A stretch of DNA of 64,000 bases from the NCBI RefSeq assembly GCF_000002075.1, contig NW_004797434.1:650423-714422 (forward strand), given 5' to 3'. Source of the stretch: Aplysia californica. Taxonomy: Eukaryota. Every line of letters starts with the position of its first letter. The stretch's first letter is position 1. This document shows positions 33,217-64,000 of the stretch, piece by piece. Below the pieces are notes generated by a model. The model searched no databases. It was not told where the DNA came from and saw only the letters and a list, made by a program, of their open reading frames with translations. Both the position numbers and the translations under genes were made by a program.

Positions 33217-33318
33217 CTGGAAGTTTCTGGATGTGCGTCTTGCATTTCCTCTCCACGGCCCACAGTTCCTTGTCCTGACCCCCTGCGCTCACAACTGTGA
33301 TGGCTGCCCCGTAGCTAC
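33217..33318 (-). CDS. DDX20: DDX20 exon 9
   Basis: GSYGAAITVVSAGGQDKELWAVERKCKTHIQKLP; CAG acceptor, G|GTGGGT donor, phase 1-1. Confidence 0.88.
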
Positions 33319-33499
33319 CTGTAACAAATAAAGTAAAGCAGTACAATAAATGCGTAATAAAACCCCATGAAAGCAAAATCACTGCATGCAATATGAAATG
33401 TCTCCGAAAAACCCTAAACATCATGAGACGAGATAGGCAGAGAAATGAAGAAGTAAGAGCAGCTATTAGCACTGAGTCCTGCCTGCATTTCATAGAAAG

Positions 33500-33757
33500 A
33501 AAGAGAGAATAAAATGGGTTTGGCTCCCTGTTATGTATGTCACCTAGCCAGCCAGCCTCAAGAGCCTATAACACCAAGCACTCAGGCTATAAAGGAAGAG
33601 GAAGGCCACGCAAAAGGTGGATTGAGGGTGTCAAGGAAACCCTGAGAAATCATAATATCCCAACTGAAAGAACTGCGGAGCTGGCCTACCACAGAAAACT
33701 GCATCTCCCCTTGACTCTTAAAGGCAATAGAGGATAAAAAAGTAAAAGTAAAGTAAG
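33500..33757 (+). mobile_element. 5'-truncated RTE-like LINE 3' end
   Basis: GYKGRGRPRKRWIEGVKE motif followed by an (AAGTA)n tail. Confidence 0.75.
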
Positions 33758-34221
33758 TATTATATTCAGTCAGAATGAATGAAAAGTCAGCATGACAATG
33801 GCCGCATTTTGAGAAGAAAAAGTCATGCTAAAAATAACACTGAGAAACATCCACAAACAACACACTGTGAAATGTGCTACCTTCCAGTCAGAGAGTGTGT
33901 ATGTATGTGGCACCTGTGAGCAGCTATTTAAGCTACATTGTTGTCTTCTCTCATTTAATTTATACTCTACTTTGGCTACACCTTTATACATCCTTTCTCA
34001 GAGTATACAATAGGGAATTTTGGTAAATTATGGAAACCCCCCTCCCAATGAGTTCCTGGCTTTTGTTAGTCCCCCCAATAAAGATTTCCTCATTAGTTTT
34101 CACTCAGTGAACACAAATTCACAAACAATGCAGGATTGTGCCCATATAGGTACCATGTTCAACTCTCCAAAAACACCTCTCAGTACATTTGTCTTTCCTA
34201 GGTCTATCTGTGTCAAGAAAG

Positions 34222-34385
34222 TATAATAATAGAGAGCATTTGTATGGCGCAAATCCCCGCTCAACAGCAAGCTTTATGCGCTTCACAATCTATACTATTA
34301 CCCCAGCAGACCTAAGAGCATTCTGAAACAGCCTCAACTTCCTGGGAAGCACACAGTGCAGGCAGCCATTTATAGGCGCTAAAAC
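34222..34385 (-). mobile_element. SINE 3' part with an L2-type tail (TGTGAAGCGC...GCGCCATACAAAT..(ATT)n)
   Basis: Homologous fragment at about 27340-27420. Confidence 0.55.
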
Positions 34386-34730
34386 ATTAACAGGCTATGC
34401 CAGTGAAATTCTTTCCATTAACATTGTTTCTCTACCATGAAAAGACAAATACAGAACATCATCCAAGTTTTAAAGAGGAAATAGATATTGATTTACAACA
34501 TCAGGATTCACAACAACAGCAAATGATCTTAGCAGTTTGTTCATGTTTGAGTGCTTACTTGGCTACTTGCACTGTGTTCCTTAGGAAGCAGAGAATGTTT
34601 TTGAGTATCTAGGGTCAGCAAGGATAAGAATAGTTGTTCAGAGCACAAAGCATGGATATATGCGCTATATAAATAAATTATGTTAATATAAAGGTACAAA
34701 TTCTGAAACACACTGTCAGCACAAACTCAC

Positions 34731-34836
34731 CAAAGCGTCCTGCTCTGCCTATCCTGTGCAAATACGTCTCAGAGTCATGGGGAACGTCTAAATTGATGAC
34801 CAGGTTCACTTTGTCTGCATCTATTCCCCTTGACGT
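34731..34836 (-). CDS. DDX20: DDX20 exon 8 (motifs V, VI)
   Basis: [35 protein letters not shown]. Confidence 0.94.
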
Positions 34837-35974
34837 CTGACAGAGAAAGAAAGCAGAATGCTGAATCTTACAAACAAACAATTGCAACATTCTAGCATGC
34901 ATTTCTCAAATTAGATAAGATATAAGATAAAATAAATCATTATTATCCAGATGCTATCACATTGGTTTGGTGTTTCACCACTCATACACACACACCACAT
35001 CCATTTAAATATCCTTTCTTCCACACACATATCTGTACACTTAATCATATAATAGTATGCTTGCACTTAAATTATAAATGAACAATTATAGTTAACAATA
35101 ATAGTATTCAGCTAGATACATAATCGGTATTCTGATAGTAACCCATTGATATTCTGATAATACATGCTATAAAGGTCAAAGGAATACTTAGATGATTAAG
35201 ATGATAAGAGTTTAATGGATGGTGGTAAAAATGACCTTCAGTATCTTTCTTTTTTACAAATAAGAAGCATAAGTCTTTTACTTTTTATTGATGTTTTAAT
35301 TTGAGGGAACAAGGGATTTCGGTTGTCCGAAAGCAGGAATTGATTTTCCTTGTGTGACATTGTATAATTCACCAAAATAAAGGAATGCTGACGTTGAAAT
35401 TTTGCATGCTGTCTGTAAAGCAAACTGAAAACAAATCCATCCACCAAACGCCCTATAGTTGACAAAGACAGCAGTTATTAGTCAGAGGGATGCGCCAAAA
35501 AGACTGGAAGCAGTTTACGTCCCAATTGACACAACTAAGGTCATTTAGGAGGCAGGCTGCTTTTACCCAGCCTATCAGGGTCAGCCCGAGCAGTATGGGA
35601 CACAATATTTCAGCAGAATGATGGAGATACACAATAAAATACTCTCCCTAAGCATGAATATAATCTCTTGTCTTCAAGCGGGAGCACCATTAGCTCAGAT
35701 GCCATAGTTAACATCCAAAAACATTATTTTCTAATTTTTTTAGTAAGAGTTTCACAGCACTTGTGATACAACAAGGTCTTATAATATGAGCCAAAGATTA
35801 GAGGCGTTACAAGAGAGTAACAAACACAAAAAAATAAAATGGAAGACATATAATGATTATAGATGTTTGATAGGAAAGAAGGAGCCCACCACACAAGAGC
35901 ACCTGCCATCCACCCACTCAAGACATTCTTAAACTTAGATTGTATGAGTAAGCAAGATGAGGGGAACCACATAC

Positions 35975-36116
35975 CAGATCAGTTGAGATGAGGATGCGAC
36001 ACTTGTATGTTTTCAGCTGCTCCATGGCAAAAGTTCTTTCTTTCTGATCTAGGCAGCCAGCAATACAGGCCGTGGGCCAGTTCCTCATCTCCAGCTCTGA
36101 CTGCAAATTCTGTGCC
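35975..36116 (-). CDS. DDX20: DDX20 exon 7
   Basis: AQNLQSEL...CIAGCLDQKER...CRILISTDL; donor CTG|GTATGT. Confidence 0.92.
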
Positions 36117-36850
36117 CTGTGAGCCCCAGACAGAAGATTTGTTTTGTTTTGAGTAGGTGTTTTACGGTACTATTGATTCAGTTCGGTCATATAAGCGCCA
36201 TCAGACAAAAGAGAAAGAGAATTTAACTAATATAAAAAACAACATGGCTTTGGTTTTTCCCAGATTAAAATTTTTAAATTACAGAATCAATTGAATAACA
36301 ATTTCAAAACTGTTTGTCATCACAGTTATTACAGTCAGAGGGACGCACCAAAATGACTGGAAGCAGTTTACATCCCAATCAACACAATCAATGTCATCTA
36401 AGAGGCAGGCTGCTTCGACATTAAGTATAACTGGCATCAAAACACAAGAATAACCCCCATCCAAAAAAACAACAACAATGCTCTTTCCACTGTTTTGTTA
36501 TAGCAAAAGCAAAAATATTAACACTTTCATCATTAACCTTAGCACCGCTGTTTTCACTGCAAATCTATATGTAACTACACGTCAACCCATCTTACAAAAA
36601 CAGAAATCCCTTTCTTTTTACACATTATGAAAAGCCCAATATGCCCCCCCAAGATATCATCTTCTTCAACATTATAAGCTCTCTTTGCCAAAGGGCATAC
36701 CAGGAGGACCAGGCAAACTCAGCACCGTAAGATAAGATTTTTATTGATCTCCAAAAAGAGAAATTTACTGTGTGTGACATGGTAAATACATGCACACGCA
36801 CTCGTCAACACACAATCTCTCTTTTTTTTTTGGGGGGGGGGGGGGGGGTC

Positions 36851-37355
36851 AGTGTTTTACGACGCTGGCAACTGCATAAGGTCATATGAGCGCACACGAC
36901 ATATTAAACATTTTCAGTTGGTAGGAAATTTGGAGTTTTGCCCGCGTGACGGCCGAAGCCAACGTTTATCGCTTTTAGACCACCAAGGGATCTTTAATGT
37001 GCGCAACTTGCACACCAGACCTCCAAGATTTTTCGCCCTTGTCCGAGAAGGCTAGGTGTAGATCTTTCCAACCAGAAGATCAAGGGTGTGGCTGAAAGAC
37101 AGCAGTAAGGAGCCAAGGAGTAACCATAGAAAGGCTGCAGAAAGAGCTGGGAGCCCAGAGGAGGGGGCACAGGAGGTGAGGGGGTGGGGGCAGAAATTGG
37201 AAACAAAAGCAGACAACAGAACATTGCTAGAGAGCAGGAAAGGAGGTGAAAGGAGACAATTTCAGACAAGAAAATTTTTCGGTCGCTACCCAAATTCAAA
37301 CCCGGGACCTTTGAATGAGAGGCAAACACCTTAACCTCTAGACTACGAGAGCCCC
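36851..37355 (-). mobile_element. SINE family B copy
   Basis: Full length; TSD ACACAATCTCT. Confidence 0.85.
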
Positions 37356-37476
37356 CACACAATCTCTGTGAAAGTGTCAAAATGAGGGGCTTATCAAAAA
37401 ATACTATGATAGACTTTTTATCATAACAAGACTCTTATAAACAGATGTATCACAAAAGACACAAAAGTAAGCTTAC

Positions 37477-37615
37477 CGGGTCTGCATGTTGGAGAAAATG
37501 AGACACTGTTGGAAAGCCACTGTGTTCAGAATATTCAGGATCACATCAGTTTTGGCTTTGAACACAATATTGGCTAGGGGATGGTTGGGGACAACAACGT
37601 GGTACTGCTTGATGC
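37477..37615 (-). CDS. DDX20: DDX20 exon 6 (motif IV)
   Basis: Hand translation GIKQYHVVVPNHPLANIVFKAKTDVILNILNTVAFQQCLIFSNMQTR; canonical AG/GT, phases fit. Confidence 0.9.
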
Positions 37616-37963
37616 CTGTATGGGTTTAAAAGATGGGGAAGAGAAGTGAAAAGTAAGATTAAAGACAAAACTAAATAAAAGTGTAATCCACGCTGGAAAT
37701 TCTGAGCAGACACAAATAGCAGGTTGACAGTGCAAATGAAAACATGAGTGAGAGATCACAAATAAACACAACTACCCAAACAAATGTCACTTTGCACAGA
37801 GCCACGGGCTCAAGTACACATGCACTAATATCCATCTCCTCGCTTTGACTGGCTACAAGCACTTCAATTCTCTCACTCACTGCATTTGTTAAACTAGTGC
37901 ACATCCCACTTATCAGCTTTTATTGTTGATAACTAAATGCACCCAAATTCACCCACCAAACAG

Positions 37964-38141
37964 AATGTTTTAGTAACAGTTTCACAGCACTTGCAAAACA
38001 ATTCGGTCATTTAAGTGTTAAAGATTAGAGGTGTTACTAGAGAGTAACAAACACAAAAAAGCAGGAGGAGAGATCAGGACGATAGATGTTTGATAAGAAA
38101 AAAAGGAGCAAGCCACATCAGAGCACCCGCCAACCACCCAC
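37964..38141 (-). mobile_element. Family A copy inserted at +6 of the DDX20 exon 5 donor
   Basis: 13-bp TSD ACCCACCAA(T/A)CAG at 38142-38154 and 37951-37963. Confidence 0.85.
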
Positions 38142-38147
38142 ACCCAC

Positions 38148-38290
38148 CAATCAGGGCCGGGTCTGTGATGTTGAGCCGGACAAACGTCGGGTTCCTCATG
38201 TAGGAAGTCAGGTGATGAGCCAAGTACTCCGGGTAAGTGGCAGACAGGGCGAGGATCTGCTTGTTCTCAGGTAGACTTGAGTATATCCAA
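38148..38290 (-). CDS. DDX20: DDX20 exon 5 (SAT motif)
   Basis: [25 protein letters not shown]...[11 protein letters not shown]; donor G|GTGGGT. Confidence 0.92.
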
Positions 38291-38724
38291 CTGAAACGTA
38301 CAACGATCAGAGATGTAAGAATCCAAACTAAAGAATAACAATAAAGGGAATTAATACAGCCCCTAACCACTAGAAGGCCCTCAGCACTGTACAATGCAGA
38401 ATTATCACTCACCTGATGAACTAGATGACAGAAAATGCATATTGTGAGACCATTTACCAACAAAAACACACACACAAACATATACACGCAAAACTCAATG
38501 ACTAACACACAAATAAAAATACAAAATTTACTGGCAGAGGATAGTGTTGTTTTAGGTTATTAACATTTTATTTTCCAGGCTGCTGAGATAATTCAAACTC
38601 ATGAAACCCATTGGGTCTTAATGTCCAACATGTTCATATTTTTTACCAATCACATTTGGTTAACATTAAGACATGATTTAAATGGCATACAGTATCCATT
38701 TGTGAAACTCAAACCAAAACTCAC

Positions 38725-38839
38725 TTAATGGACTCCTGAAAGTGGCCTTCTTCTAGCAGTTTATCTGCTTCATCAAGAATAAAGAGCCGAATACTGTTTG
38801 TCTTCAGAGCTCCAATCTCAATCAACTGTTTCACACGAC
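38725..38839 (-). CDS. DDX20: DDX20 exon 4 (DEAD box)
   Basis: Hand translation [38 protein letters not shown]; not in the ORF track; canonical AG/GT. Confidence 0.92.
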
Positions 38840-39433
38840 CTGCAAAGCAAAAAGCACTTTGATTTTTACAAAGTAATACACAAAAACATTGCAATATTCA
38901 TTTCGGATTTTAAAATTATTTCCATTTCAAGATATCAATTGATTTCTTTCAATATTCGAAAACTGGGGGGATTGCAGAAAAAAGAATATTTAAATCAGCA
39001 TCGAAGTTGTATCTGCTATCGTTTGTAAAGTACAGAAATGAAACTTGAAACCATGGGTTGTTGAACTGTAGTGTACAGCAAAAAGTCTTCTAATTGAGAT
39101 GCCACATTTCCTAAGGATGGAGACCCCCACCAGCCACATGCAAAGAGCACTTTTTTCTCCCAAGACATTACGATAACACTGTGCGAGCGAAACCTGTACT
39201 TCATTGGTAACATCTTAAATTTTTATGATAACAATGACCCTCGTCCAAAACATTGGATTAGGGACCTGGGTATTTTCATTGCTTTCCACTCACATGGCAT
39301 GGTGTTATCGGAGGTGGACGTAAAGTCAGACATTCCACCACATAAATAACTTATATATCACAGTTGAAAGAGGCATTAACTCCATACCTTGAACATTATG
39401 CATTATACCATCACTTCAGTCCAGCTGTCTTAC

Positions 39434-39602
39434 CTGGAGTGCCAACAGCAATGTGGCAGTTCTTGGCAAGAATCTTGTCCTGTAGGACAGGCATGCCTCC
39501 AATAAATGTATGGCACTTGAGCTGAGCCATGGTGGAGCCTATTGTGTTCACAACTGACTGGATCTGCTGAGCAATTTCTCGGGTAGGCGCCAAGACGAGT
39601 GT
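39434..39602 (-). CDS. DDX20: DDX20 exon 3 (motifs Ia, GG, Ib)
   Basis: [14 protein letters not shown]...FIGG...IAVGTP; canonical AG/GT. Confidence 0.93.
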
Positions 39603-41454
39603 CTAGAGAAAGATAATTGACAATAAAAGTTCTGGATACCTTCAAAGTTAGATTGTTGTCTTTTTTGACACTCCTGCATTAGTCAACACTACAGTCATCT
39701 GAAGTACAATTGATTGATATCAGTTCAACATATATAGCGGAACTGTGGTCTACCTGCGCTGAGCGAATGCCCGACTTAGGCACTGAAATCTAGATAAGAA
39801 AGAAGGTTTTATTCCGAGGTCCTTGAGATTAGGCAAGTCAATTAATAAAAATGCATTGCATCTGTGTTGTATTTAAGTGTAAGAACCGATATGATGCTGC
39901 AGTGGACCGAAGTGTTCACAGTTAAGTTGTTTTCCTTTTAAAAAATTTGAATGAAAGTGTTTTTATGCCCCCAGCAACACAATTTAGATCATTAACATTC
40001 AAAAGAGGCTGGCTCCAGCGCTACCTGCCAAGGCCAACCCAGGCTGAAAGGGATACAATACCCCAGCAGAAAGACCGAGATACTCAATTTTTAAAAAAGT
40101 ATTCTTATTCTTATATATATATATAATTATTATGTGTATATATATAATTATTGTGTGTGTATGTATACATATTATACATTTATATTGCTTTCCATTGTGT
40201 GTGCAAATTAGATGCTACTGTTGTCTAAATGTAGATATCTAGAGGCTCCATTAGAACAGGAAATCAATACTCAACAACAATAATGATGAATATTTTCTAT
40301 GTTAAAGAAACATCAAACCATATCAGATGAGGGGAGAGGGTAGGGTGGGGTGGATAAGAGTTTGAGTCTTGTTAGATAGAACTATACTCGGTTTAATTCT
40401 ATTGTTGTAGTCTTCACCTAAGATCCCACAATCAATACTTCCGGTTCAGTTAAGATTCTGCTGTTAAAAAATAAACCAAACAAAGCAACAACAAATTTTA
40501 ATATACAAGAGTCATCACTAAGATAAATTATCTCCCCCCCCCCCCCCCCCCCCCCGGAGTGTAATAAGGGACTAAAAACGCTGCTCTCCATATCATACTT
40601 TACTGAACAAAACAAAAAAAACCTTCAAAGGTCAGCCACGCTCATGCATGCGATCACACCTCCAAAGGTGCTGTTATCTCTTTTTAAAAAAAATATTTGA
40701 AATCATTGTGCGGTCCACTTTGTGAAAACCAGGAAACAAAATTATTGTAATCAATAATGTTATTATTTATAGACCAAGACATACTGTTAGCAATCAGAAA
40801 AAGCTGGCATTGACCCTCTGTTGTGTTCGCTATTCCTTACTCATAAAGTTAGTTATGGCACACGCCTAGAATCAAGCAATCATAATATCTTAAATTCAGT
40901 TTTAAAGTATATTTTTATCCATTTCTAATACTTAAATATTTTAGCATATTGAAAGATTATCTTTATAATTTGGTATGTTTGATAATTTTATGTTACTTGG
41001 ACAAGTTTACTTCTTATTTTACACATCTTTTTTTTATTTTTAAACTAGATTATAACATAAAACTCTGAAAGAATTGAACAGTCCGTATCACACACATAAT
41101 TTTTCTTTCTCCCTGTCATTATCCGTCAGTTGATCACAATCTCTCTCTCTCTCTCTTCTCTCTGTCTGTCTGTCTCTCTCTCTCCTTCTCTTTCTCTCTT
41201 TTATTTGATTTTTCCCATTCTCCTTCGTCCCTTCCCAAGGCCCGCCCCTCCTCTTTCATCCCTGCCCCATCCCCTCTTCCTTTCGTGCATTTCCCCACCC
41301 CCACAACGTGGCCCAGCCCGGTAAGATTCTATAAAAAGAAACGCCACAGTTCGAGATTTAGCCCACACTCGGCGGCCATATTTGATCCCCACCGCGGCGT
41401 ACTGCTCGTGGCGCCGCGAAGAGAGAGAGGAGGCTCCATTAGTTCTAAACTCCT

Positions 41455-41493
<39 letters not shown>

Positions 41494-41959
41494 TATATAT
41501 ATATGAATATTCTTAGTCTTATCCAAAGGTCAAATTGGAGAATTAAAAACAATAGCATGGTTTTAAATTCCTGAATGTATTGAGCAAACAATATCAACAA
41601 ACTACGAAAAAGCTTATTTTACCCTGCATAATAAATTGCAGATTTAAAGATAGAATAAAAGCTTGAACAAAGAATCACTTACATTACAACAAAGGTTTAT
41701 CATAAATGGAACTCAGGTTGTCATTAAAACATGAATTGTCTGTGAAAGAGCATTCAGGAAGCTGTAGGGTTTACTTAGGGAATACTGAATATTGGAAGAA
41801 AACATCACTACTGGTTCTATAGTACACTCATGAATAATTAGCAATTTATATCAACACTGTAATTAAACGGTTCATTATAAACAGGGAAAGTGTTGTAAGA
41901 AGTCTCCATTATCACCAACTGCCAACATTTTTTCCTGTACACTAGCTGACACCTCTTAC

Positions 41960-42054
41960 CTGTACACAAGCTGTAGTCGAGTCTATACTCTCCAAGGCAA
42001 CAACTGTGAACACACAGGTCTTTCCAGTACCAGACTTCGCCTGAACAATTAGGT
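41960..42054 (-). CDS. DDX20: DDX20 exon 2 (motif I)
   Basis: [16 protein letters not shown]; CAG acceptor, CAG|GTAAGA donor, phases fit. Confidence 0.93.
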
Positions 42055-42435
42055 CTGTAGGGATTGTAAATTTTTGTGTGGTTTTAGTAAGTTTTATGGC
42101 ACTTGCAGGATCATAAAAATGCAATGCATGAACTTGATAAGCAAGCAAAAATAAAACAATATAAAGCTTAATCTGTAAATTAGGTTTACCCAGTACTAAT
42201 CCACGTGCACAGCAGAACTTGAACTAAGGACTCACCAATATACCTTCAAAAAAGAGGAGAGTTGTTCTCATTTTACAGGGGACATATAATTAGGCTACTT
42301 TAGTAAGTTTTTGGCCAAGATATTCTGTCCATGCATGTCCATAATTACTTTTAACTGTTGTACCATTCATTTTCTTTATGAGAGAGCAATGGAGAAAGGT
42401 GATTGGGAGACCTGCAGCCAGGAGCAGGGCTGGTG

Positions 42436-42922
42436 TTTTTTTGTTTTGTTTTGGTAAGTGTTTTACGGCGCTCGCAACCGCATAAGGTCATATGAACACG
42501 CAGGACACACTAAATATTTTCAGTTTGGGAATTAATTTTGAATTTTGCCTGGTGGGTGGTGGCCTTAGCCTATATTTTAGACCACCAAAGGATCATTAAG
42601 GTGAGCAGCTTGCACACGGGATCTCCGAGATTTTTTGCCCTTATCCGAGAAGGCTAGGTTTTAAATCTTACCTACCTTAAGATAGGTGTGTGGCTGAAAG
42701 ACAGCAGTAAGAAGGAGCCAAAGAATAGCAGTAAAAAGGCTGCAGAAAGAGTCAGAAGCCCAGAAGAGTGGCAGAAAGTGGAAGCGAAAGCAGAAGACTG
42801 AACATGACTAGAGAACAGGAAAAGAGGTGAAAGGAGAAAATTTTCCATCGCTGTCAGGTTTTGAACCTGGGACCTATTGAATGAGAGGCGAACATCGCAA
42901 CTTCTAGATTACGAGAGCCCCC
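42436..42922 (-). mobile_element. SINE family B copy
   Basis: Full length; TSD AGGGCTGGTG. Confidence 0.85.
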
Positions 42923-43654
42923 AGGGCTGGTGAGGGGGACCATTGATTTGAATACAAATTGTAGGCCTGCACACATTTCCCAGCCGGTGATCTAAAAAGT
43001 AATATCCCTCCATCAGTATAGATATATATATACTATTAATACAGAGTACTAACAGCCAAACATATTTGCCTCCCATACAGGGCAGATCGTTAAGAATTTC
43101 CCTCTTTTAGTCTATCAAGATCTACTACATTTTCAAAATAAGTAATAAAAGCCTGCTTCAAAGCAATGCCATGGACGTATCCAGCAACAGAAAAAAGATG
43201 TCAAAATAAAATACACACATTAATACGGAAGGACATCCGAAATGAGTGACCACCCCAACAAACAAAATAAAGAAGAGACCTGGCTAACCCTATCTCTACC
43301 CCTCTATTAAAGGCTACTCTGTGTAGTCATAGTGGTCGCATTTGAAGTCCTCCCCTAAAATACGGTCCAAACTATCCAGGACGACCACCCACTGATAGTT
43401 GCCCCGCAGTTGACAACCCATGAGATCTAGCAAAGAAGAAAAAGATGCAATGAATTAAATAGAATATGTGGCCGTTGTTACGGTTGTTAGACAGTTAGAG
43501 CAGGTTCCACTACACCTGGCAGGCATTTAAAAAAATTTAAGTACTTGCCTACTTACTTTAATATGATAAAGTTTATGATGAAGTGAAGCATTGCATGCAC
43601 TACATTTTTTACTCTGATCATTCCCGCCTTTTTTTCTTTTCTTTTGGCACTTTT

Positions 43655-44298
43655 TGGTAAGTGTTTTATTACGGTACTCTCAACTGCATAGGTCATATGA
43701 ACGTGCCACATTCAACTTTTTCAGTTGGTATAAAATTTTGAATTTTGCCCGGGAGGCACCGAAAGCTACTCTTGTCTTATTATTAGAAAAGTCTTATCGA
43801 CTTTTGGACCACCATGGGATCTTTAACATGTGTCGATGATGTGTGCAACTGGACTTGCACGCGGGACCTCCAAGATTTTTTCCCCTTGTCCGAAAACACT
43901 AGGTGTAGGTGTAGATCTTTCCTACCACAAGATCAGGGGTGTGGCTGAAAGACAGCAGTAAGAAGGAGCCATGAAGTAGCAGTAGAAAGGCTGCAGAAAG
44001 AGTCAGGGGCGCAGAGGTGGGGGGCAAAGAAGGTGAGGCACCGTGAGCCGTGAGGTGGTGGGGGCAAAGAAGGTGAGGCACCGTGAGGGGGTGGGGGCAG
44101 AAAGTGGAGATGAAAGCAGACCACAGAATATTGTTAGAGAGCAGGAAATGATGTAGACCTAAAGAAGAACATTTTAGAGAAGAACATTTTCGGTGGCTAG
44201 AGTCTATCTGGCTGGATTCGAATCCGGGATCTATTCCTGTTGCATGGGCATGAGAGTGAGAGGCGAACACCACCTCTAGGCCAGGATGAGAGCCCCCC
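43655..44298 (-). mobile_element. SINE family B copy in DDX20 intron 1, with internal duplications
   Basis: Homologous to 58626-59163; duplicated GAGGTGG..GGGGCAAAGAAGGTGAGGCACCGTGAG unit. Confidence 0.8.
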
Positions 44299-44389
44299 CC
44301 CCTCTCACTCCCATATCCATAACCTGTCATAGAAGTAGAAAAGCACAGCACCCCTTCATCCAGCCTCAAAATGAACAGGCCCTTCTTAC

Positions 44390-44570
44390 CTAAGCCACAA
44401 CGTCCAAGCGGAATGGCTTTTAGTTGTATAGGAGAGGGCATTTCAAACCCGGCATTGTTGAGTCCTTCCAGCACGGGCTTCGATAACAGAAGTCCCGCGA
44501 AGTCAACGGACTCTGTAATAAGTACATCATGGGTGCGTTCTTTTTCCTTTAAACGATGAGCTACAGACAT
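44390..44570 (-). CDS. DDX20: DDX20/Gemin3 DEAD-box helicase coding exon 1 of 10; full CDS 5988 nt, about 1995 aa
   Basis: MSVAHRL...RTHDV...[32 protein letters not shown] (Q motif, DDX20-specific context); donor G|GTAAGA. Confidence 0.93.
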
Positions 44571-45154: not shown

Positions 45155-45231
45155 ATGGCATCTCTGAGCTCAGGGTCAGCTAGAGAGAGCAAGGCTGGGT
45201 TTTGGAAAAAGAACACCAGTGTTCCCGGAAG
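45155..45231 (+). CDS. TBC1D22: TBC1D22 (A/B-like Rab-GAP) coding exon 1; gene continues past the window end
   Basis: MASLSSGSARESKAGFWKKNTSVPG matches the family N-terminus (FWKR...PGS); donor AG|GTGCGT, phase 2. Confidence 0.85.
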
Positions 45232-49512: not shown

Positions 49513-50538
49513 TAAAGAAAGTGGTGATGGGGGGATGGTAAATTTTTACTTTCACTTCCACTCACAGATGTACTGCTTTGGGGGGTCAAACTGCAGTTAT
49601 GTTTGCTGCAGATCACTCATAAAGCCACTAAAACTTTCACAATTAATTATTTTCAAGAAAATTTCAAACCTAATTGCAAAAATATCAAATTATGAGTTGA
49701 AACGGGTGCATGCCCCCCTGTAACCCCCCAGATTTTTTTAGGAAGTGATTATTCTTACCCCAAGCATGTCTCGCTATTCTCACCCCCTCGTTTTACCGGA
49801 AATGACCCTAAAGTGATCAGGGCTGAGGTTAGCGGGCATGACCCAAGGTTGGGGGGGGGGGGTCAGGGCTAATGCTCCACAGCAACATGTTCGTCACTGT
49901 TCGTGTCCGAATAGTCACAGTCAGGGTTGTTAGTTTGGAGCCAAATCCCAGAAATTTGGCTCATTTGGGTTGTGTCTGGCCGGAGAATTTCATTTGACTC
50001 TCTGGCTCTTTTATTTTGTCTGCAGCCAAAAATATACTGCAGTTTGATCCCCAAAGCAGTGCAGCTGTGTGTGGGAGTGAAAGTAAAAATTAACCCAAGA
50101 TTCTCCTTTATTATTGTTATTGTGCATTCAAAGAAATTTATGGGGCTTGTTGTAAAAATGACTAGCATTGATTTATAAAAGCATTTAAAAATAGAACTTT
50201 CTTAATTTTTGTGTTGCAATAAAGGTACAAAAAGATGAAAATTTATTTGGACTTTCGATTCAAAGGGACTCTCATCAGCCTAAAATTCAACTGAAATTGG
50301 TTCAGGAATTCTATCAAGGACTATATGCAGTTGTTTATTTGAATGTGTTTTTTTTTTCACTTTTGGGTTTTTGGTACAAGATCCTTGAATTATTATATTA
50401 AGCTATTAAGTCAAGGTTTGAAATGTGAACTGATTATTTTGGTGCCAGTCCAGATGATTAATTACATTTTCTTTTAGAGAAGAAAATTGTGACTGATAGT
50501 TACTTATAACTTCTAATTGTAGTCTGCTTATTTTTCAG

Positions 50539-50592
50539 TATCAAACCAGTGTATGGGGCTCAGCATCCTCCTCCACAAACTGACATCACGTC
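50539..50592 (+). CDS. TBC1D22: TBC1D22 exon 2
   Basis: Hand translation SIKPVYGAQHPPPQTDIT (conserved VYGAQHPP); TTTTTCAG acceptor, GTAAGT donor. Confidence 0.9.
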
Positions 50593-51021
50593 GTAAGTTT
50601 CAATCGATCCCAACACCACAATGGCTTTTCTCTGTTGCCACTTCATATTGTTATATTCAAGCACTTACACTCTAAAGCTTATGTCCTGTTCTCATTCTCA
50701 GGAATTTCAGTTTTTCTTTCCGAGCATTTATCTACATCACATTGTGTATCAGAAATTAAGGCTTTGCTGCAAGTTATAACTTTCTATTTTCAGAATGGAC
50801 TGGCTCCACAAGAAGTGCCACTTGTATGCTGCAAAAAAATTGAGTTTGGAATAATTAAAATTAATGTGTGAGTTGTTCAGTGGTGTGTCTGGGGGAGGGG
50901 GGGGGGGTAGAAGAAGGGGGTACTACATTTTTAGTTTTGAAACTTTCCTGATACTTTTTCTTTCTGCATTTTGGCATCCCTTGAATTTTAGTCAAATTGT
51001 CATGGTCTTGTACTTTTGCAG

Positions 51022-51278
51022 ACCTGGTTGGCCAGTGAAGAAAGATGACAAGGGAAAGAGCGGTAAACGAGACCCGTTCCACGATTTTGAGAACAAGACC
51101 TCTGATGCCTGGGACGATGGCGACGATGACCTCATTCAGATGGCCAGTCTCAAGATGTCGCTACGAGATGTGCAGACGTCGGCCAAGGTGGTCCTAGACA
51201 ATCATAGCAAGAGAGCAAATTCCCAGCAGCAGCAACATCCTGTGAGGGGATCTTCATCTGCGAACTCTGTACATACAG
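51022..51278 (+). CDS. TBC1D22: TBC1D22 exon 3
   Basis: FHDFENKTSDAWDDGDDD and VLDNHS motifs; canonical sites. Confidence 0.9.
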
Positions 51279-52296
51279 GTGAGCCATTTGTAGATGTGCT
51301 TACTTACTTGGTTGGAGAATGTGTATCATTGCAGGCGGTACAATGCCTTAGCTGCCCCTCTCCCCTCTCCAGGATCCATAACGGTTGACTTGCTGATCGT
51401 GCTAGTTATAAGCTCGTTGGATATTAAAAAGTATGGAACGCTTCAGGAATTTGAATGTCCTTGCGCAGGAGCCATGCCAATCTTCTCTGTATCATTCCAG
51501 TTTAGGTTTGTGTCCCATATTGGCCGTTTTTAGATGTATATGTAGACAGCTTGCCTGTAATGCGTTCTTTAGAAATGAACAGATACGGAAAGGTGTCTGG
51601 ATTTTTTTTTTCCCCCTCTTCAAAAAGGGTGTGGTACTGTGGTATAATGAGCAGAAGTTATGTGGTGTTTGTTCACTGTAAACTACTAACATGTTTTTTG
51701 AGATGTGTGTTGTGGTATTTTTGTGTAAATGTTTTTTCACTGTCATATATCCTGTTTTTTATTTATGTTCATTTTCAGTATTGTATGTCTGGTGAATAAC
51801 ATCCTGTATTTTTTGTCGATAATCTCTAGTCCAAAAACGGGTATTTTATTTCACTCCCCCCAAGTAGGTGGTGCGACACGTTTAATTGTTCTCAAGAATG
51901 TTTATGTTTTACGGTGCATTTGGGATATTTGCTCTGTTCTGTTGTCTTTGTCGTTTTTTAAATTTTTTTATCTTCTTCTTTATTTAAATCACAGAGCCAA
52001 GTGCTATTCCTGTAAAATTACCATTCTGTGTTTAGTAAGCTGCTTGTTAAATACATGTAAGCATATATTGCTCGTGGGTGGTTGGCGGATGCTCTGGTAT
52101 GGTTTGCTCCTTCATTCCCATCAAACATCTATCGTCCTCTTTCCTTTTTCTTTTTTGTGTTTGATACTCTCTTGTAACACCTCAAATCTTTGATACTTAC
52201 AGGACCCAATTGTGTTGCAAATGCCGTAGAATTTTACTAAAACACATTGCTCTTTTTTGACATGTTTCGTGTTTATGGTCTCTTCCCGCGAGGCAG

Positions 52297-52521
52297 ATGA
52301 AAGCTCCTCGTCAGCGCAGCAGCAGTCCCATCCCCCCACTCAACCCTCCCCTCCTCACCACCACCCGAGCGGGCCAGGCCTCGGGGTGAGACTCAACAGT
52401 GGGGGCTACCAGCCCCCCAAGATGACCTCTATACGATACGTCACAAACAAGACTCCCGACCGCGAGGCAGCCCGCATGGAGAAATTCAAAGCAGTTTTCA
52501 CCGAGCCATCGTTAGACCTGA
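52297..52521 (+). CDS. TBC1D22: TBC1D22 exon 4
   Basis: DESSSSAQQ...DREAARMEKFKAVFTEPSLDL; GCAG acceptor in phase 1, donor A|GTTAGT. Confidence 0.85.
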
Positions 52522-53529: not shown

Positions 53530-53600
53530 CGGAACTTCGTAAACTCTGCTGGTCAGGGATTCCTAAATCCGTCCGTCCAACTGCATGGAAAATTCTCTCT
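53530..53600 (+). CDS. TBC1D22: TBC1D22 exon 5 (start of TBC domain)
   Basis: ELRKLCWSGIPKSVRPTAWKILS. Confidence 0.93.
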
Positions 53601-53759: not shown

Positions 53760-53888
53760 GGTTACCTCCCCACAGCAGCAGACAGAAGGCAGGAGACTCT
53801 AGAACGCAAACGCAAGGAATACTTCAGCTATATAGATCAGTATTACGAAACGAGGTATCAAGACCAGCACGAGGAAACCTTCAGACAG
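53760..53888 (+). CDS. TBC1D22: TBC1D22 exon 6
   Basis: GYLPTAADRRQETLERKRKEY...HEETFRQ; phase 0-0. Confidence 0.93.
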
Positions 53889-54575: not shown

Positions 54576-54736
54576 NNNNNNNNNNNNNNNNNNNNNNNNN
54601 NNNNNNNNNNNNNNNNNNNNNNNNNNNNNNNNNNNNNNNNNNNNNNNNNNNNNNNNNNNNNNNNNNNNNNNNNNNNNNNNNNNNNNNNNNNNNNNNNNNN
54701 NNNNNNNNNNNNNNNNNNNNNNNNNNNNNNNNNNNN
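54576..54736. other. Assembly gap (N run)
   Basis: Ns. Confidence 1.
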
Positions 54737-57382: not shown

Positions 57383-57548
57383 NNNNNNNNNNNNNNNNNN
57401 NNNNNNNNNNNNNNNNNNNNNNNNNNNNNNNNNNNNNNNNNNNNNNNNNNNNNNNNNNNNNNNNNNNNNNNNNNNNNNNNNNNNNNNNNNNNNNNNNNNN
57501 NNNNNNNNNNNNNNNNNNNNNNNNNNNNNNNNNNNNNNNNNNNNNNNN
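57383..57548. other. Assembly gap (N run) between microsatellites
   Basis: Ns. Confidence 1.
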
Positions 57549-58625: not shown

Positions 58626-59163
58626 GGGGGCTCTCGTGGCCTAGAGGTTAAGGTGTTGGCCTCTCATTCAAAGGTCCCGGGTTCGAATCCGGGTAACGAC
58701 CAAAAAATTTTCTTCTCTAAAATTGTCTCCTTTCCCATCCTTTCCTGATCTCTAACAATGTTCTGTTGTCTGCTTTCATTTCCACTTTCTGCCCCACCCC
58801 CTCACCTCCTTTGCCCCCTCCTCTGGGCTCCTGGCTCTTTCTGCAGCCTTTCTACTGCTACTCCTTGGCTCCTCCTAACTGCTGTCTTTCTGCCACACCC
58901 CTGATCTTCTGGTAGGAAAGATCTACACCTAGCCTTCTCGGACAAGGGCGAAAAATCTCGGAGGGCCCGTGTGCAAGTTGCGCACGTTAAAGATCCCTTG
59001 GTGGTCTAAAATCGACAAGAGTAGGCTTCGGCCGCCACCCGGGCAAAATTCCAAATTTCCTACCAACTGAAAAATATTAGGTGTGTCCCGCGCGCTCATA
59101 TGACCTATGCAGTTGCGAGCGCCGTAAAACCCTATACTAAACAAACAAACAAACCTAAACCTA
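58626..59163 (+). mobile_element. tRNA-derived SINE family B (about 510 bp)
   Basis: A box TGGCCTAGAGG, B box GGTTCGAATCC, CTC anticodon-like loop (tRNA-Glu-like); central CCTTCTCGGA...CACGTTAAAGATCCC domain; 3' tail shared with family A. Confidence 0.85.
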
Positions 59164-59249
59164 AGTTGCTCCTGCACAGGTCAGCATGTTCTGTTCCAGG
59201 TGGGTGCGACGCAGGGACTTTCTCACCACCTCTTTGCCTCTTATTTCAG

Positions 59250-59315
59250 ATTCACATCGACATCCCCCGCATGAACCCACTAATCCCCATATTTCAGCAG
59301 CTCATAGTTCAGGAA
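59250..59315 (+). CDS. TBC1D22: TBC1D22 exon 7a (canonical arginine-finger exon)
   Basis: IHIDIPRMNPLIPIFQQLIVQE; TTTCAG acceptor, GAA|GTGAGT donor; 66 nt, phase 0-0. Confidence 0.93.
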
Positions 59316-61948
59316 GTGAGTAGCCAGTCCTCCGATCTCCAAAGAATTTCTTTTTTTTTTTTTGTGCATATGGGTTTTGTTTTTGTTTTTTTCCTCTCAA
59401 TTTTTGGACAATTTCTTGTGCGTGCTCATGCCTGTTTTCACGGTAATGGCTGCCTTTCCTTCCTCGTGCATCCGTCCTCACCCCGTCCTCACCCATACCT
59501 CCTCCTCCTCCTCCTTCTCCTCCTCCTCCTTGTCCTTCTTTTCTTTCTCCTCTGCCTGCTTCCATCATTAGCTGTTCCGTGACAGCGTGTGTGTAGATGT
59601 AGACGTGTGTTTCATGATGTTTGTGTGTGGACCCAGTTCAGCCCATGCAGTGTGATCACATCCCTCTCTCGTCTCTGTCTTGCACATGTGGTAGAAATAG
59701 TTTTAGCTGCTCTGTTGTGGGTGAAAAAAGAGGTATAAAAATGGAAATTGATTTGAAAATGAGCGGGGGGCTGATGAAATGGAATAATTTTTTAAAAGGA
59801 CTTCAAGAGATCAGAAATAAATTTAGAAAAAAGGTGGAAGATGCAGTATAAATGTTTTTTGGAAATGAAGGGAGAGGGTAGAGGTGGTTTTGAAAATAAA
59901 AATGCTCTGCAAGCGTCTATCCACATGAAGTTGCAGTACTAACAAAATCCTTCCTCAAACACCCTGCACTGACATGTTGCCAAATATTAATACTTCTCCA
60001 AAATGGAGGACTGTGCAATTGTATACAATGATTTGCTTTTATGGCAGAGATGGCGTGACTACTTACTTAGTGTTTAGTTAGTGTCTGTTGCCATAGCAAC
60101 TCCTGAATCACTGGTGAGATGAGTGTGATCGGACTGGATGGGCTGTCTTGTCTTTGTTGTGACTGACCTGAAGTTCCGTGACTGTACTCACATTAACTTT
60201 CTCAGTACGCAAGGGATTCCAAAATCTTACGCACCCAATTTGAGGCAGCAAAGGGTGTTTTCTGAAAACAGCTATAATTCAGTCAAATCTTAATGGATTT
60301 GTTTGTGTGGGCACTCAAGCTATTTGTAGTTGGACAGAAAAATCGCGACATGGGTGAAAATTGGTTGTGAATGTAGCAGAGTCCAGTTCGTGTGCGGAGG
60401 ATTGAGAAGGTCAAAAGACTTTTTCCTTTGATTGTTAATGTTTTGATTGTAGATCCTTTAGCATTAGAGTGAGAGCTGGAGCAGATAGTGATAAATTGTT
60501 TGTGGACATGATTGTTAGCTGTCTGCATGCTTTTTGCACAGGAAAAAAAAGGAGTCTGTGACCGCTGTTCTGTACAGTGCATGTTGTATTGTTTTCAAGA
60601 TTTCTGTGTTTGTGTCCTGCTGACCTTTTGACTCTGCTGCGTTAGCGTTGGTTGCTGTTGTCCTGAAATGTTTTTTTTTCATTCTGTGTGGTTTGAGTCC
60701 CAGTTTGTAAAGTTTGTTACAGAGGAGTTCTTTTGTGACGCTGTTTTCTGTTTGTTCATGAAATGCAAGGTGTTCAGTCAAACCGTGTGGGAAGAGACTT
60801 ATGTTTTAGGCTGCTTGCTAGAGCGGATGGTTAGAGGGTGTCGTTGATTGTCCGTCACTTCTTTTTTTCCCCCCGAGTTATACATCGTAATTTTTCTCAG
60901 AGCTAAATGACAACGAGGGTGGCTGCAGGGTGCCACTTGTAGGTTGTACTAAGTATCTGTCGTCTTGTCAGTGTGATTCTCTTTAAATAACAAATGATTA
61001 GGCAGGCTGAAAGACTTGGCAACTTGGCTTCTTTTATTGTCTTTCTTATTGACTGTGTTCGCTGGTGGAGGTGAAGATTTGGGGATGTTGGTTTTCTGCT
61101 CTTGACTTGGTGCTATCTATCGGGTATTGGTGTTTCCACAAGTTTTTTTCCCCCTTTCTGTTGCCAGAGAGTTTCAAAATGAATTGAGCTCACTATGCTT
61201 GGACCTTCTTGAAAACGTCTTCCGTTTTCCTTTTTTCCATCTGTTTTACCCTCTTGATGTCCTTTTCTCAATATGCTTGTCAAACTGTCGTTCTTTTTCT
61301 TTTCTTGCTGCTTATTCATCTCCTTTCCTTCTTCCAATTACCTTCATTGGTTTGATTAAATGTTACCTCTGCGGACTCTTCCGTAATTTTTCTCTCCTTT
61401 TAAACTTCAGACATTAGAAACATCAAAAGTTTTTGTGGAAACTTCTGAATCTAATTTTGCCCTTTTTGGATTTGTACCATTTACCTGTCAACCTTACTTT
61501 GGATTTTCACCTCAGTTTTTTTTGGTTTTGTGCTGCAATATAACTCAGAATATATGTAGAGGTACAATGTACTAGTTATTTTTTAAAACAAATGCTACGG
61601 TAATTTTGGGTTGTGTTAGTCAGCTTGATTAAATTATGTTGCTTCATTTTATGTTTTGCGTTGAGCTCTCACAACGAAAGAGCTGTTTTTGTGCCGCTGT
61701 GTTTGTGAATGCCTCAATATGTTTTGTTTTGTTTTTTGTTTTGTTTTGTTTTGTTTCCTCAAAGAAGCTTGTCCACAGTGTCGGCAGCGTCCCCTTAACA
61801 CAGGCATGCCGTGGGACGGATGTGAGAGAGTACACACTACACGCCAACGCGCGCACAAACTATAGCGCTTTGCTAGCTACCTCTTGTTTACTTAACCGAG
61901 GAAGAGAGTTCTCCTCCACCAACTGGTCCCGTTAATCTGCTTTCACAG

Positions 61949-62014
61949 ATTCTAAAAGATATCCCCCGCATGACCTCGTTAGCTCACTTGTTCCAAGAGC
62001 GGCCTGCGCAGGAA
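61949..62014 (+). CDS. TBC1D22: TBC1D22 exon 7b (duplicated, putative mutually exclusive arginine-finger exon)
   Basis: Hand translation ILKDIPRMTSLAHLFQERPAQE; CTTTCACAG acceptor, GAA|GTAAGT donor; 66 nt, phase 0-0; 11/22 aa identical to 7a. Confidence 0.8.
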
Positions 62015-62314
62015 GTAAGTATTGTATTCACCTGGACCGACTGAGCTCTCAGCGGTGCAGCCCCCCCCCCCCCCCCCCCCCCCCCCCCAAATCCTCCCGA
62101 GACCTGTGTAGCAGCTCGTGGTTGTGCTGAAGTGAAGCGTTGCACTCTCACAGGATTGCCTGACAGCTATCACTAACTACTAACCGTGCCCTTAAGTTTT
62201 GTCCTGGCCCCCCCCCCCCCCCTCCCCCCAGCCTCCCCAGGAGCTTTCATTCTATTCACCTTTCTTAGAAGTGATTCGTAGAGAAGTTGTGGTTGGTTTT
62301 TCACAATGAGCTGT

Positions 62315-62800
62315 AGAAGTTGTGGTGGTTCTTTAAAATAAGAAATAGAAGTTGTGGTGGTTCTTTAAAATAAGAAATAGAAGTTGTGGTGGTTCTTTAA
62401 AATAAGAAATAGAAGTTGTGGTGGTTCTTTAAAATAAGAAATAGAAGTTGTGGTGGTTCTTTAAAATAAGAAATAGAAGTTGTGGTTTTTTAATTTGCGA
62501 AATAGAAGTTGTGGTATTTTTTTGTTAAATTGAGAAATAGAAGTTGTGGTTTTTTTTTTTTTTGTAATGAGTGATAGAAGTTGTGGTGGTTCTGTATAAG
62601 AAATAGAAGTTGTGGTGGTTCTGTATAAGAAATAGTAATAATAGTTGTGGTTTTTTCAAAAACAGAAATAAAAGTTGTGGTGGTTCTTTCTGACAAATAT
62701 AGGTTGTGGTGTTTTTTAAATGAGATATAGGTTGTGGTGGTTCTGTATGAGAAATAGAAGTTGTGGTGGTTCTTTATGAAAAAATATAGGTTGTGGTTCC
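62315..62800. repeat. 32-bp minisatellite AGAAGTTGTGGTGGTTCTTTAAAATAAGAAAT
   Basis: About 5 perfect copies followed by about 9 degenerate copies. Confidence 0.9.
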
Positions 62801-64000
62801 TGTTTGGGAAATAAAATTTGTTTTGTTTTGGGGAAAGAGATGGTTCAATTTGGGAAATAGAAATGGTTCCGTTCTGAAGGGAGAAGTGGTTCTGTTCTTG
62901 AAATAAGTAGCAGCATGGAGGGGCATATGTTTGATATAGGGCTTGACTGTAGCTCCTATTATATTCTGTATCCTTGTTTGTTTTTTCAATTTGTTTCACT
63001 GTCTTTTAGTATTTCATGAATTAAAAGAGGAAAAATAAACTATTTCAAAGATAAATTCAATTCATTTTTCTTTATGAGCACCGAGGGAGCAGTATTACTA
63101 CTAAAATATCGTAATAGTCGAATTTCAAATTTCAGGTTGTGGCCATCCTATTTGAAGTAAACTTTTTTTGATTAATTAAATTTCTTCTTAATTTTGTGTC
63201 TGTTACTTCACAAAAAAATGTTAATTGATTTATAACTTGTGAAAGATGCTCTTTTTCTCTAGTTGTTGTCCAAAGGACAAAGCTCTAACTTTACAAAATA
63301 ATTGCAAGTTTTTAATTGTGGTAGGCCAGCTTTTTTTTAGTGGTAATACTGCCTCCTGGAATGCTTGAAAATTTGTTTTTCTTCTTTATCACAGTCAATG
63401 CATTTTTTCGTTTTATGAGGAAGATAAGGGAACTTTTAAAAAAGATTTTCTTTGACAAAATTTTTTGTTTGTTAAATGAGGTTTTTGATTTTCAGCCGGA
63501 GGAGTTTGTACCTTTTAATTTTGCTGCTATAAAGTGGACCTCTTTTATTTTTAAAGTGTTTTAATCTGCCCTGCTTTTTAAAAAACAAAACAAATGCATA
63601 TAAGTAAAATTGTGAAAGAAGAAAGGATGATTGGAATCATGTGCATGAGCGCCTGTAAACCTGTTAAAAATTGCTAAAGATTAAATTTAGAAAGACTGTA
63701 GCTCTGGGCGAAAAAAATAGATTTGAGACATGCACTTAAGAACTGTTGTTCAGCAAGCTGTAAATTAAGGGACAACTGAATTCCATAAATTGTTAGCACA
63801 ATTGCCAAGAAGTATGTTTCATGGGTCCTTGAAATAATTACTGCCTCACGAGGTATGCGTACATAGCTCACTCCCTAAATAATGGCACATATATAGCATC
63901 AAGTATGTTTCGTTCGAGCTTGAAATATTATAAGATAAGATAGGATACTACTTTATTATCCCAGAGGGAAATTTTCCTTGGCTGTACAGGACCGTAAAAA

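What the first reader, a model, noticed from the sequence alone, without database searches (positions are those of the whole stretch)
59250..62014. Two alternative catalytic exons in TBC1D22: the Rab-GAP arginine-finger exon is tandemly duplicated (candidate mutually exclusive pair)
Seen: 59250-59315 (IHIDIPRMNPLIPIFQQLIVQE) and 61949-62014 (ILKDIPRMTSLAHLFQERPAQE) are both 66 nt and phase 0-0, with good acceptors and GAA|GTRAGT donors. 11/22 residues are identical, and several conserved residues use different synonymous codons (GAC/GAT, CTA/TTA, TTT/TTC, CAG/CAA). The flanking introns are unrelated, which points to an old duplication kept by protein-level selection. Known: IxxDxxR supplies the catalytic Arg finger of TBC domains, and 7a matches the canonical TBC1D22 sequence. 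Inference: the gene makes two isoforms that differ only in the active-site loop and following helix, possibly changing Rab specificity or rate. Exon 7b is absent from the ORF track and easy for annotators to miss. I know of no description of this arrangement but cannot search the literature.
Basis: partly seen in the sequence, partly recalled or inferred. Interest (0 to 1): 0.88.

Follow-up and report, generated by a model that had tools for sequence, protein, structure and literature searches.

The report
Swappable catalytic exons in Rab-GAP TBC1D22
The sea-slug gene for TBC1D22, an enzyme that switches off membrane-traffic Rab proteins, carries two alternative versions of the exon holding its catalytic arginine; the pair is kept across molluscs and worms, and fishes have a similar pair that probably arose separately.

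Summary
Observation confirmed. The window is Aplysia californica TBC1D22; exons 7a (59250-59315) and 7b (61949-62014) are 66-nt, phase 0-0 paralogues, each keeping the IxxDxxR arginine finger. Transcript contigs from three studies join exon 6>7b>8 directly, one run also shows 6>7a, and none of four runs shows 7a>7b. 7b is under purifying selection and conserved in gastropods, bivalves and Octopus. Divergent second copies occur in nemerteans and annelids (one absent from the Capitella model); all replace I-x-I-D with I-x-K-D. The arthropod models checked have one exon. Fish and shark TBC1D22A has its own pair, probably independent, and human TBC1D22A and 22B differ at this same loop and in published RAB1B binding. 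Most likely a mutually exclusive pair that tunes Rab recognition; function is inferred, not shown. Exclusivity may be leaky (both-exon and no-exon models exist). A 15-bp clamp helix is Aplysia-only. No paper found. The scan had not found TBC1D22 on other DNA; it noted a like pattern in UBR1/2. Known kind, new and testable case.

The parts
45155..45229 (+). TBC1D22 coding exon 1 (approximate: matched codons)
   Evidence: RefSeq Aplysia proteins P0210/P0269 map here
50537..50593 (+). Exon 2 (approximate); skipped in RefSeq isoform X3
51023..51277 (+). Exon 3 (approximate)
52296..52520 (+). Exon 4 (approximate)
53530..53600 (+). Exon 5, start of the TBC domain
53760..53888 (+). Exon 6, common upstream exon, ends in phase 0; spliced to 7a or 7b
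   Evidence: its last letters precede both 7a and 7b in transcript contigs
59250..59315 (+). Exon 7a, ancestral-type arginine-finger exon (IHIDIPR; Asp codon 59259-59261, Arg codon 59268-59270)
   Evidence: RefSeq X1/X3; 6>7a contig in run X13; 19/22 identical to the Hydra sequence
61949..62014 (+). Exon 7b, derived arginine-finger exon (ILKDIPR; Lys codon 61955-61957, Asp 61958-61960, Arg 61967-61969)
   Evidence: RefSeq X2; 6>7b and 7b>8 joins in runs X9, X13, X7; pN 0.07-0.15 against pS 0.45-0.98 in four molluscs
59195..59209 (+). 5' arm of a candidate 15-bp long-range RNA helix, 41-55 nt upstream of the 7a acceptor (Aplysia only; function unproven)
   Evidence: -22 kcal/mol, 0/400 shuffles but 6/538 random intron window pairs reach it; not found at this position in six other species
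62022..62036 (+). 3' arm of the same candidate helix, starting 8 nt after the 7b donor

Best explanation
An old tandem duplication of the 66-nt exon that encodes the second half of the arginine-finger helix, the following loop and the first turn of the next helix gave TBC1D22 a mutually exclusive exon pair. SHOWN: exon 6 is spliced to 7a or to 7b, and 7b to exon 8; both forms are 513 aa, keep Asp275, Arg278 and the 35-residue spacing to the glutamine finger Gln313; both exons are under purifying selection; the 7b form is predicted to fold as a normal Gyp1/TBC1D22 domain. INFERRED: both isoforms are active dual-finger Rab-GAPs, and the swap (His-Ile to Leu-Lys just before the Asp; Asn-Pro-Leu-Ile-Pro-Ile to Thr-Ser-Leu-Ala-His-Leu in the loop, losing both prolines) alters the surface beside the catalytic arginine and so changes Rab preference or rate. 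7a, which resembles Gyp1 and human TBC1D22B, would be the Rab1/Ypt1-type form. Exon choice is probably tissue-regulated by splicing factors; no conserved steric or RNA-structure lock was found, so exclusivity may be leaky. The duplication most likely arose once in the lophotrochozoan ancestor, and separately in jawed-vertebrate TBC1D22A.
For: Splice joins in contigs from three studies, no 7a>7b joint. RefSeq X1/X2 differ only here. Genomic pairs in Biomphalaria, Elysia, Mytilus, Crassostrea, Tubulanus, Capitella and Owenia; isoform pairs in Pomacea, Gigantopelta, scallops, Octopus and Lineus. 18 distinct molluscan 7b peptides share ILKD..RM...AHL......Q. Model of the 7b form: pLDDT 86.8, TM 0.88-0.89 to 2QFZ and to Gyp1 in the Rab33 complex 2G77. 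Human TBC1D22B and TBC1D22A differ at this loop, and only 22B binds RAB1B-GTP (PMC12631847). All twelve lophotrochozoan second copies group together, 96-97% bootstrap.
Against: No biochemical data on either isoform; no Rab complex could be modelled. Human 22A and 22B differ at many other positions, so the RAB1B result is only suggestive. Rab choice in TBC proteins often depends on regions outside the TBC domain (PMC13090580). 20 of 106 molluscan protein records join both exons and 2 skip both. Only contigs, not raw reads, were available, and 7a>8 lay outside the stretch laid. The tree has 22 columns and long branches; the Owenia copy lies upstream of 7a; a shared origin with the vertebrate copy is not rejected (p-AU 0.41).
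Confidence: 0.6

Rival explanations
1. The pair is mutually exclusive and functional, but both forms act on the same Rabs at similar rates; the swapped loop changes something else, such as dimerisation, partner binding, stability or regulation.
For: All catalytic residues are kept in both exons. In TBC1D17 the helices and loop next to IxxDxxR/YxQ form a dimer interface, and Rab selection often lies outside the TBC domain (PMC13090580). The loop is the less confident part of the model (pLDDT about 73).
Against: The most constant change in every lophotrochozoan second copy is Ile to Lys next to the catalytic Asp, on the arginine-finger helix itself.
Confidence: 0.2
2. 7a and 7b are semi-independent cassette exons. 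Single-exon forms are active, while both-exon and no-exon forms are real, regulated products that give a GAP-impaired scaffold; splicing then sets GAP on or off rather than specificity.
For: All four combinations keep the frame, so nonsense-mediated decay would not remove them. RefSeq has a no-exon Aplysia isoform X4, and both-exon models in Octopus, Pomacea, Gigantopelta, oysters and fishes. The Aplysia helix 59195-59209/62022-62036 encloses both exons.
Against: No 7a>7b or both-exon contig in four Aplysia runs; all assembled-transcript proteins in the molluscan clusters carry one exon; automatic annotators can chain such exons (own knowledge); this would not explain why two different sequences are conserved.
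Confidence: 0.13
3. 7b is a decaying or neutral duplicate, or an assembly artefact.
For: Aplysia 7b has a few private changes near its end.
Against: Spliced in three studies; pN far below pS; conserved from gastropods to bivalves and Octopus; single-copy with unrelated flanks.
Confidence: 0.02

Closest known systems
Tandem-duplicated, mutually exclusive homologous exons (PMC9741552, PMC8373072, PMC5740500, PMC4494069; e.g. SNAP25 5a/5b, OGDH 4a/4b, SCN 5a/5b)
   Same: Adjacent homologous exons of equal phase, one used per transcript, ancient, under purifying selection; repeated independent duplication in orthologous genes is documented (PMC9741552).
   Different: TBC1D22 was not found in the texts of PMC9741552 and PMC4494069 or in the supplements held for PMC9741552 and PMC5740500; some supplements are not held or are cut. 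Here the swapped piece carries the catalytic arginine of a GAP. No distant branch point or short intron enforces exclusivity in Aplysia (intron 2633 nt).
TBC1D22/Gyp1 family of dual-finger TBC Rab-GAPs (PF00566; PDB 2QFZ, 6D0S, 1FKM, 2G77)
   Same: Same domain, IxxDxxR and YxQ motifs, Arg-to-Gln spacing of 35 as in human TBC1D22B R274/Q309.
   Different: One gene encodes two versions of the arginine-finger segment; 7b has Lys where Gyp1, Hydra, arthropod and vertebrate sequences have Ile.
Jawed-vertebrate TBC1D22A exon pair (RefSeq isoforms of sturgeon, bowfin, teleosts, lungfish, ray)
   Same: Same exon duplicated; single-exon isoforms of each type and both-exon models are annotated.
   Different: The derived copy is 21 aa, comes first in both-exon models and keeps I-x-I-D; it groups apart from the lophotrochozoan copies. 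Known here from protein models only; the fish gene was too long to fetch.
NCBI RefSeq annotation of Aplysia californica TBC1D22B (XP_005097860.1, XP_005097859.1, XP_035825536.1, XP_035825537.1)
   Same: Already lists 7a, 7b and no-exon isoforms.
   Different: Automatic models with no comment on homology, catalysis, conservation or origin.

Membership tests
Tandem-duplicated mutually exclusive exon pair | Adjacent exons homologous in sequence | tested here: met
   11/22 aa, 41/66 nt
Tandem-duplicated mutually exclusive exon pair | Same phase and compatible length, valid splice sites | tested here: met
   66 nt, phase 0-0, AG/GT in Aplysia and four other molluscs
Tandem-duplicated mutually exclusive exon pair | Each exon is spliced between the same flanking exons | tested here: met
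   6>7b, 7b>8 and 6>7a seen in contigs; 7a>8 from RefSeq X1 only
Tandem-duplicated mutually exclusive exon pair | The two exons are not, or only rarely, joined in one transcript | tested here: inconclusive
   No joint in four runs, but contigs drop rare forms; both-exon automatic models exist in other species
Tandem-duplicated mutually exclusive exon pair | Both exons conserved under purifying selection | tested here: met
   7a pN 0-0.13, 7b pN 0.07-0.15, pS 0.45 to saturation
Tandem-duplicated mutually exclusive exon pair | Tissue- or stage-regulated choice | not testable with these tools
   Sample labels are coded and only contigs were served
RNA-structure-controlled (docking/selector) exon cluster | Conserved intronic pairing with compensatory changes | tested here: not met
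   No intron similarity beyond splice sites; helix z = -2.2 in Aplysia, between -0.7 and +0.5 in six other species; no close Aplysia relative was on hand
TBC1D22/Gyp1 Rab-GAP | TBC domain most similar to TBC1D22A/B and Gyp1 | tested here: met
   PF00566 159 bits; E 3e-148 to 6D0S; TM 0.88-0.89
TBC1D22/Gyp1 Rab-GAP | IxxDxxR arginine finger and YxQ glutamine finger intact | tested here: met
   Both isoforms; Arg278 and Gln313
TBC1D22/Gyp1 Rab-GAP | GAP activity on a Rab | not testable with these tools
   Needs an assay

The most novel reading that the evidence does not exclude
Splicing switches the Rab substrate of a TBC GAP by exchanging its arginine-finger segment. The trick arose twice on the same exon (lophotrochozoans; jawed-vertebrate TBC1D22A), and mammals kept the two versions in separate genes, so that this 21-22-residue segment accounts for the published difference in RAB1B binding between human TBC1D22B and TBC1D22A.
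Probability: 0.3. Interest if true: 0.8.

Novelty: new member of a known kind. Interest (0 to 1): 0.55.

Why it matters
How TBC-domain GAPs choose among dozens of Rabs is still poorly resolved; they are promiscuous in vitro (PMC12631847). This gene supplies natural minimal pairs: proteins identical except for 11 residues around the catalytic arginine, kept from gastropods to cephalopods, with a second such pair in fishes. Comparing them tests directly whether that segment sets specificity, and may explain why human TBC1D22B, a breast-cancer prognostic marker, binds RAB1B while TBC1D22A does not. It is also a further candidate for repeated duplication of one and the same exon. The kind of event is well known and the isoforms are already in RefSeq, which caps the score.

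Tried and rejected
Third copy of the exon: none between exons 6 and 8. Recent segmental duplication or assembly artefact: rejected. Steric exclusion by a short intron: introns between the pair are 514-2633 nt in molluscs, 1726 in Tubulanus, 118 in Capitella. Distant branch point: AG dinucleotides occur about 40 nt upstream of the 7b acceptor, so there is no long AG-free zone. Conserved intronic elements or docking/selector pairing: not found; the second Aplysia helix 59467-59478/61813-61824 is weaker (6/400 shuffles). Bivalve/nemertean microexon upstream of 7a: not found in Aplysia, Biomphalaria, Elysia, Mytilus, Tubulanus or Owenia; two N gaps in the Aplysia intron (54576-54736, 57383-57548) were left unfilled and could hide it. 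Folding the both-exon model without an alignment failed (pLDDT 37) and says nothing. Fish genomic DNA could not be fetched; four contig look-ups on shorter isoforms returned nothing. Ten paper searches and the supplement look-ups found no description; the Gyp1 structure paper was not held.

Full report
OBSERVATION. Exons 7a (59250-59315) and 7b (61949-62014) are as described: 66 nt each, phase 0-0, good acceptors and donors. They share 11/22 residues and 41/66 nt, with four synonymous codon differences; the flanks are unrelated. Between the copies pS is 0.72 and pN 0.28. No third copy lies between exon 6 (53760-53888) and exon 8, which is just beyond the window at G000:C164:716627-716747. 7b is single-copy in the genome.

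IDENTITY. The gene is the TBC1D22 orthologue of Aplysia californica: four RefSeq proteins from a contig of the same length (1,320,245 nt) map exactly onto 11 coding exons here. X1 and X3 use 7a, X2 uses 7b, X4 skips both; a MetaClust record joins both. The TBC domain scores 159 bits on PF00566 and is closest to human TBC1D22B/A and yeast Gyp1. The finger residues are Arg278 (exon 7) and Gln313 (exon 8), 35 apart, as R274/Q309 of human TBC1D22B (PMC12631847).

SPLICING. A run search with 7b plus flanks gave several small runs holding 4 of 13 words, about the share expected from the exon alone. Laying four runs on 59120-62058 showed 7b contigs preceded by exon-6 letters and followed by exon-8 letters in three runs from three studies; in two of them one contig spans both joins. 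One run also had an exon 6>7a contig at similar depth (3.9 against 3.2). No 7a>7b joint appeared, and the fourth run showed neither exon. These are contigs, whose RNA status is the tool's guess and which drop rare forms: they show presence, not proportion. Still, 7b was seen more often than 7a, and all assembled-transcript proteins in the molluscan clusters are 7b-type (part of that set came from a 7b-seeded search). 7b may therefore be the main form in many tissues (inference).

CONSERVATION. The pair, in the order a then b and both 66 nt, is in the genomic DNA of Biomphalaria, Elysia, Mytilus and Crassostrea and in isoform sets of Pomacea, Gigantopelta, scallops and Octopus. Against four molluscs 7b has pN 0.07-0.15 and pS 0.45-0.98; 18 distinct 7b peptides keep ILKD..RM...AHL......Q. 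Outside molluscs the second copy is shorter and more divergent: 57 nt and downstream in the nemertean Tubulanus (also Lineus), 63 nt and downstream in Capitella, where the fetched gene model lacks it, 60 nt and upstream in Owenia. Every one of these has Lys at the third position (ILKD, IQKD, IGKD, IEKD) where 7a-type exons have Ile. 7a is the ancestral type: 19/22 identical to Hydra, against 10/22 for 7b. Isoform sets of lobster, prawns and horseshoe crab show one exon type only; their introns were not inspected.

VERTEBRATE PARALLEL. TBC1D22A of sturgeon, bowfin, teleosts, lungfish and a ray has two versions of the same exon, a derived 21-aa one and a canonical 22-aa one, as separate and joined models. 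The three rodent TBC1D22A models seen and the human crystal structure carry the derived type; TBC1D22B carries the canonical type. In a 22-column tree the twelve lophotrochozoan second copies form one side of a branch (96-97% bootstrap) and the four vertebrate derived copies another. Differences in order, length and the missing Lys favour independent duplications, but a shared origin is not rejected (p-AU 0.41) and long branches may attract. I put independence at about 70%. Whether mammals lost the canonical copy from TBC1D22A was not tested.

STRUCTURE AND FUNCTION. The AlphaFold model of the 7b domain is confident (pLDDT 86.8, pTM 0.86) and matches 2QFZ and the Gyp1-Rab33 complex 2G77 at TM 0.88-0.89. 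Exon 7 covers the last eight residues of the helix bearing the arginine, a nine-residue loop (pLDDT about 73) and the first turn of the next helix. From established knowledge, the IxxDxxR and YxQ motifs supply the two catalytic fingers (PMC13090580, PMC12631847). Both isoforms should therefore be catalytically competent (inference). The differences flank the arginine on both sides, which makes a change in Rab preference or rate the likeliest purpose. Indirect support: human TBC1D22B, with the 7a-like loop, binds RAB1B-GTP, while TBC1D22A, with a derived loop, barely does (PMC12631847); the fly orthologue acts on Rab40 (as cited in PMC13245906), so the family's substrate is not fixed. The paralogues differ elsewhere too, and contacts in 2G77 could not be computed here.

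HOW EXCLUSIVITY IS ENFORCED. Unknown. All four combinations are in frame, the intron between the exons is long, and there is no long AG-free zone before 7b. An earlier scan note (s1-725221) proposed long-range pairings. I found a 15-bp helix between 59195-59209 and 62022-62036 (-22 kcal/mol; 0/400 shuffles, 6/538 random intron window pairs) that would cover the likely 7a branch region once 7b is transcribed. It has no counterpart at that position in six other species, and intron sequence is not conserved. I give it about 25% as a real, Aplysia-specific control. Regulation by splicing factors with some leak is the default reading; 20 of 106 molluscan records join both exons, which may be leak or annotation chaining.

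NOVELTY AND VERDICT. Tandem-duplicated mutually exclusive exons are a well-studied class, including independent origins in orthologous genes (PMC9741552) and their separation among paralogues (PMC4494069). I found no paper or held supplement that mentions this event in TBC1D22, though most subscription journals are not searched. The isoforms are in RefSeq without comment. Verdict: real, ancient, expressed; a new member of a known kind, of interest because the swapped piece is the catalytic finger of a Rab-GAP and offers a direct test of TBC specificity. Interest 0.55.

LIMITS. N gaps were left unfilled. No human DNA was searched.

Noticed in passing
L011:3183-3245 (Capitella teleta): Second arginine-finger exon (63 nt, starts IGKDVPR) 118 nt after the annotated one; absent from gene model ELT94978.1.
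   Followed up: partly
L010:3788-3808 (Crassostrea virginica); proteins P0326, P0329, P0295: An 18-21-nt alternative microexon between exon 6 and the exon-7 pair in oysters, with matching 6-7-residue inserts in scallops and Lineus models; it would insert residues into the arginine-finger helix. Not found in Aplysia outside the N gaps.
   Followed up: partly
L007:20394-24306 (Owenia fusiformis): The divergent copy lies upstream of the canonical exon, and a UDP-glucuronosyltransferase gene is nested on the opposite strand between the two; an Ig/IgGFc-domain gene is nested in an earlier intron.
   Followed up: no
L007:1-203 and the dragonet gene: CERK lies head-to-head with TBC1D22 in both Owenia and a teleost, an old linkage; in Aplysia the head-to-head neighbour appears to be a DEAD-box helicase instead.
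   Followed up: no
window 27424-44570 (-): DEAD-box helicase gene (DDX20-like by eye and by an earlier scan note; not confirmed by Pfam on the one exon tested) starting about 585 nt from the TBC1D22 start, with a 1587-aa acidic, low-complexity ORF at 27424-32187.
   Followed up: no
window 9091-9873 (+): 260-aa ORF with DUF1751 and a weak rhomboid match (TMEM115-like).
   Followed up: partly
window 62260-62910: Degenerate 29-32-nt tandem repeat in the intron after 7b.
   Followed up: no
window 53873-53878 (exon 6): Transcript contigs read GAG where the assembly has GAA (Glu codon before Thr-Phe-Arg-Gln): a synonymous difference.
   Followed up: no
RefSeq XP_035825537.1, XP_025106955.1, XP_027007255.1: In-frame isoforms lacking any arginine-finger exon are annotated in Aplysia, Pomacea and a catfish; if real they would be GAP-dead.
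   Followed up: no
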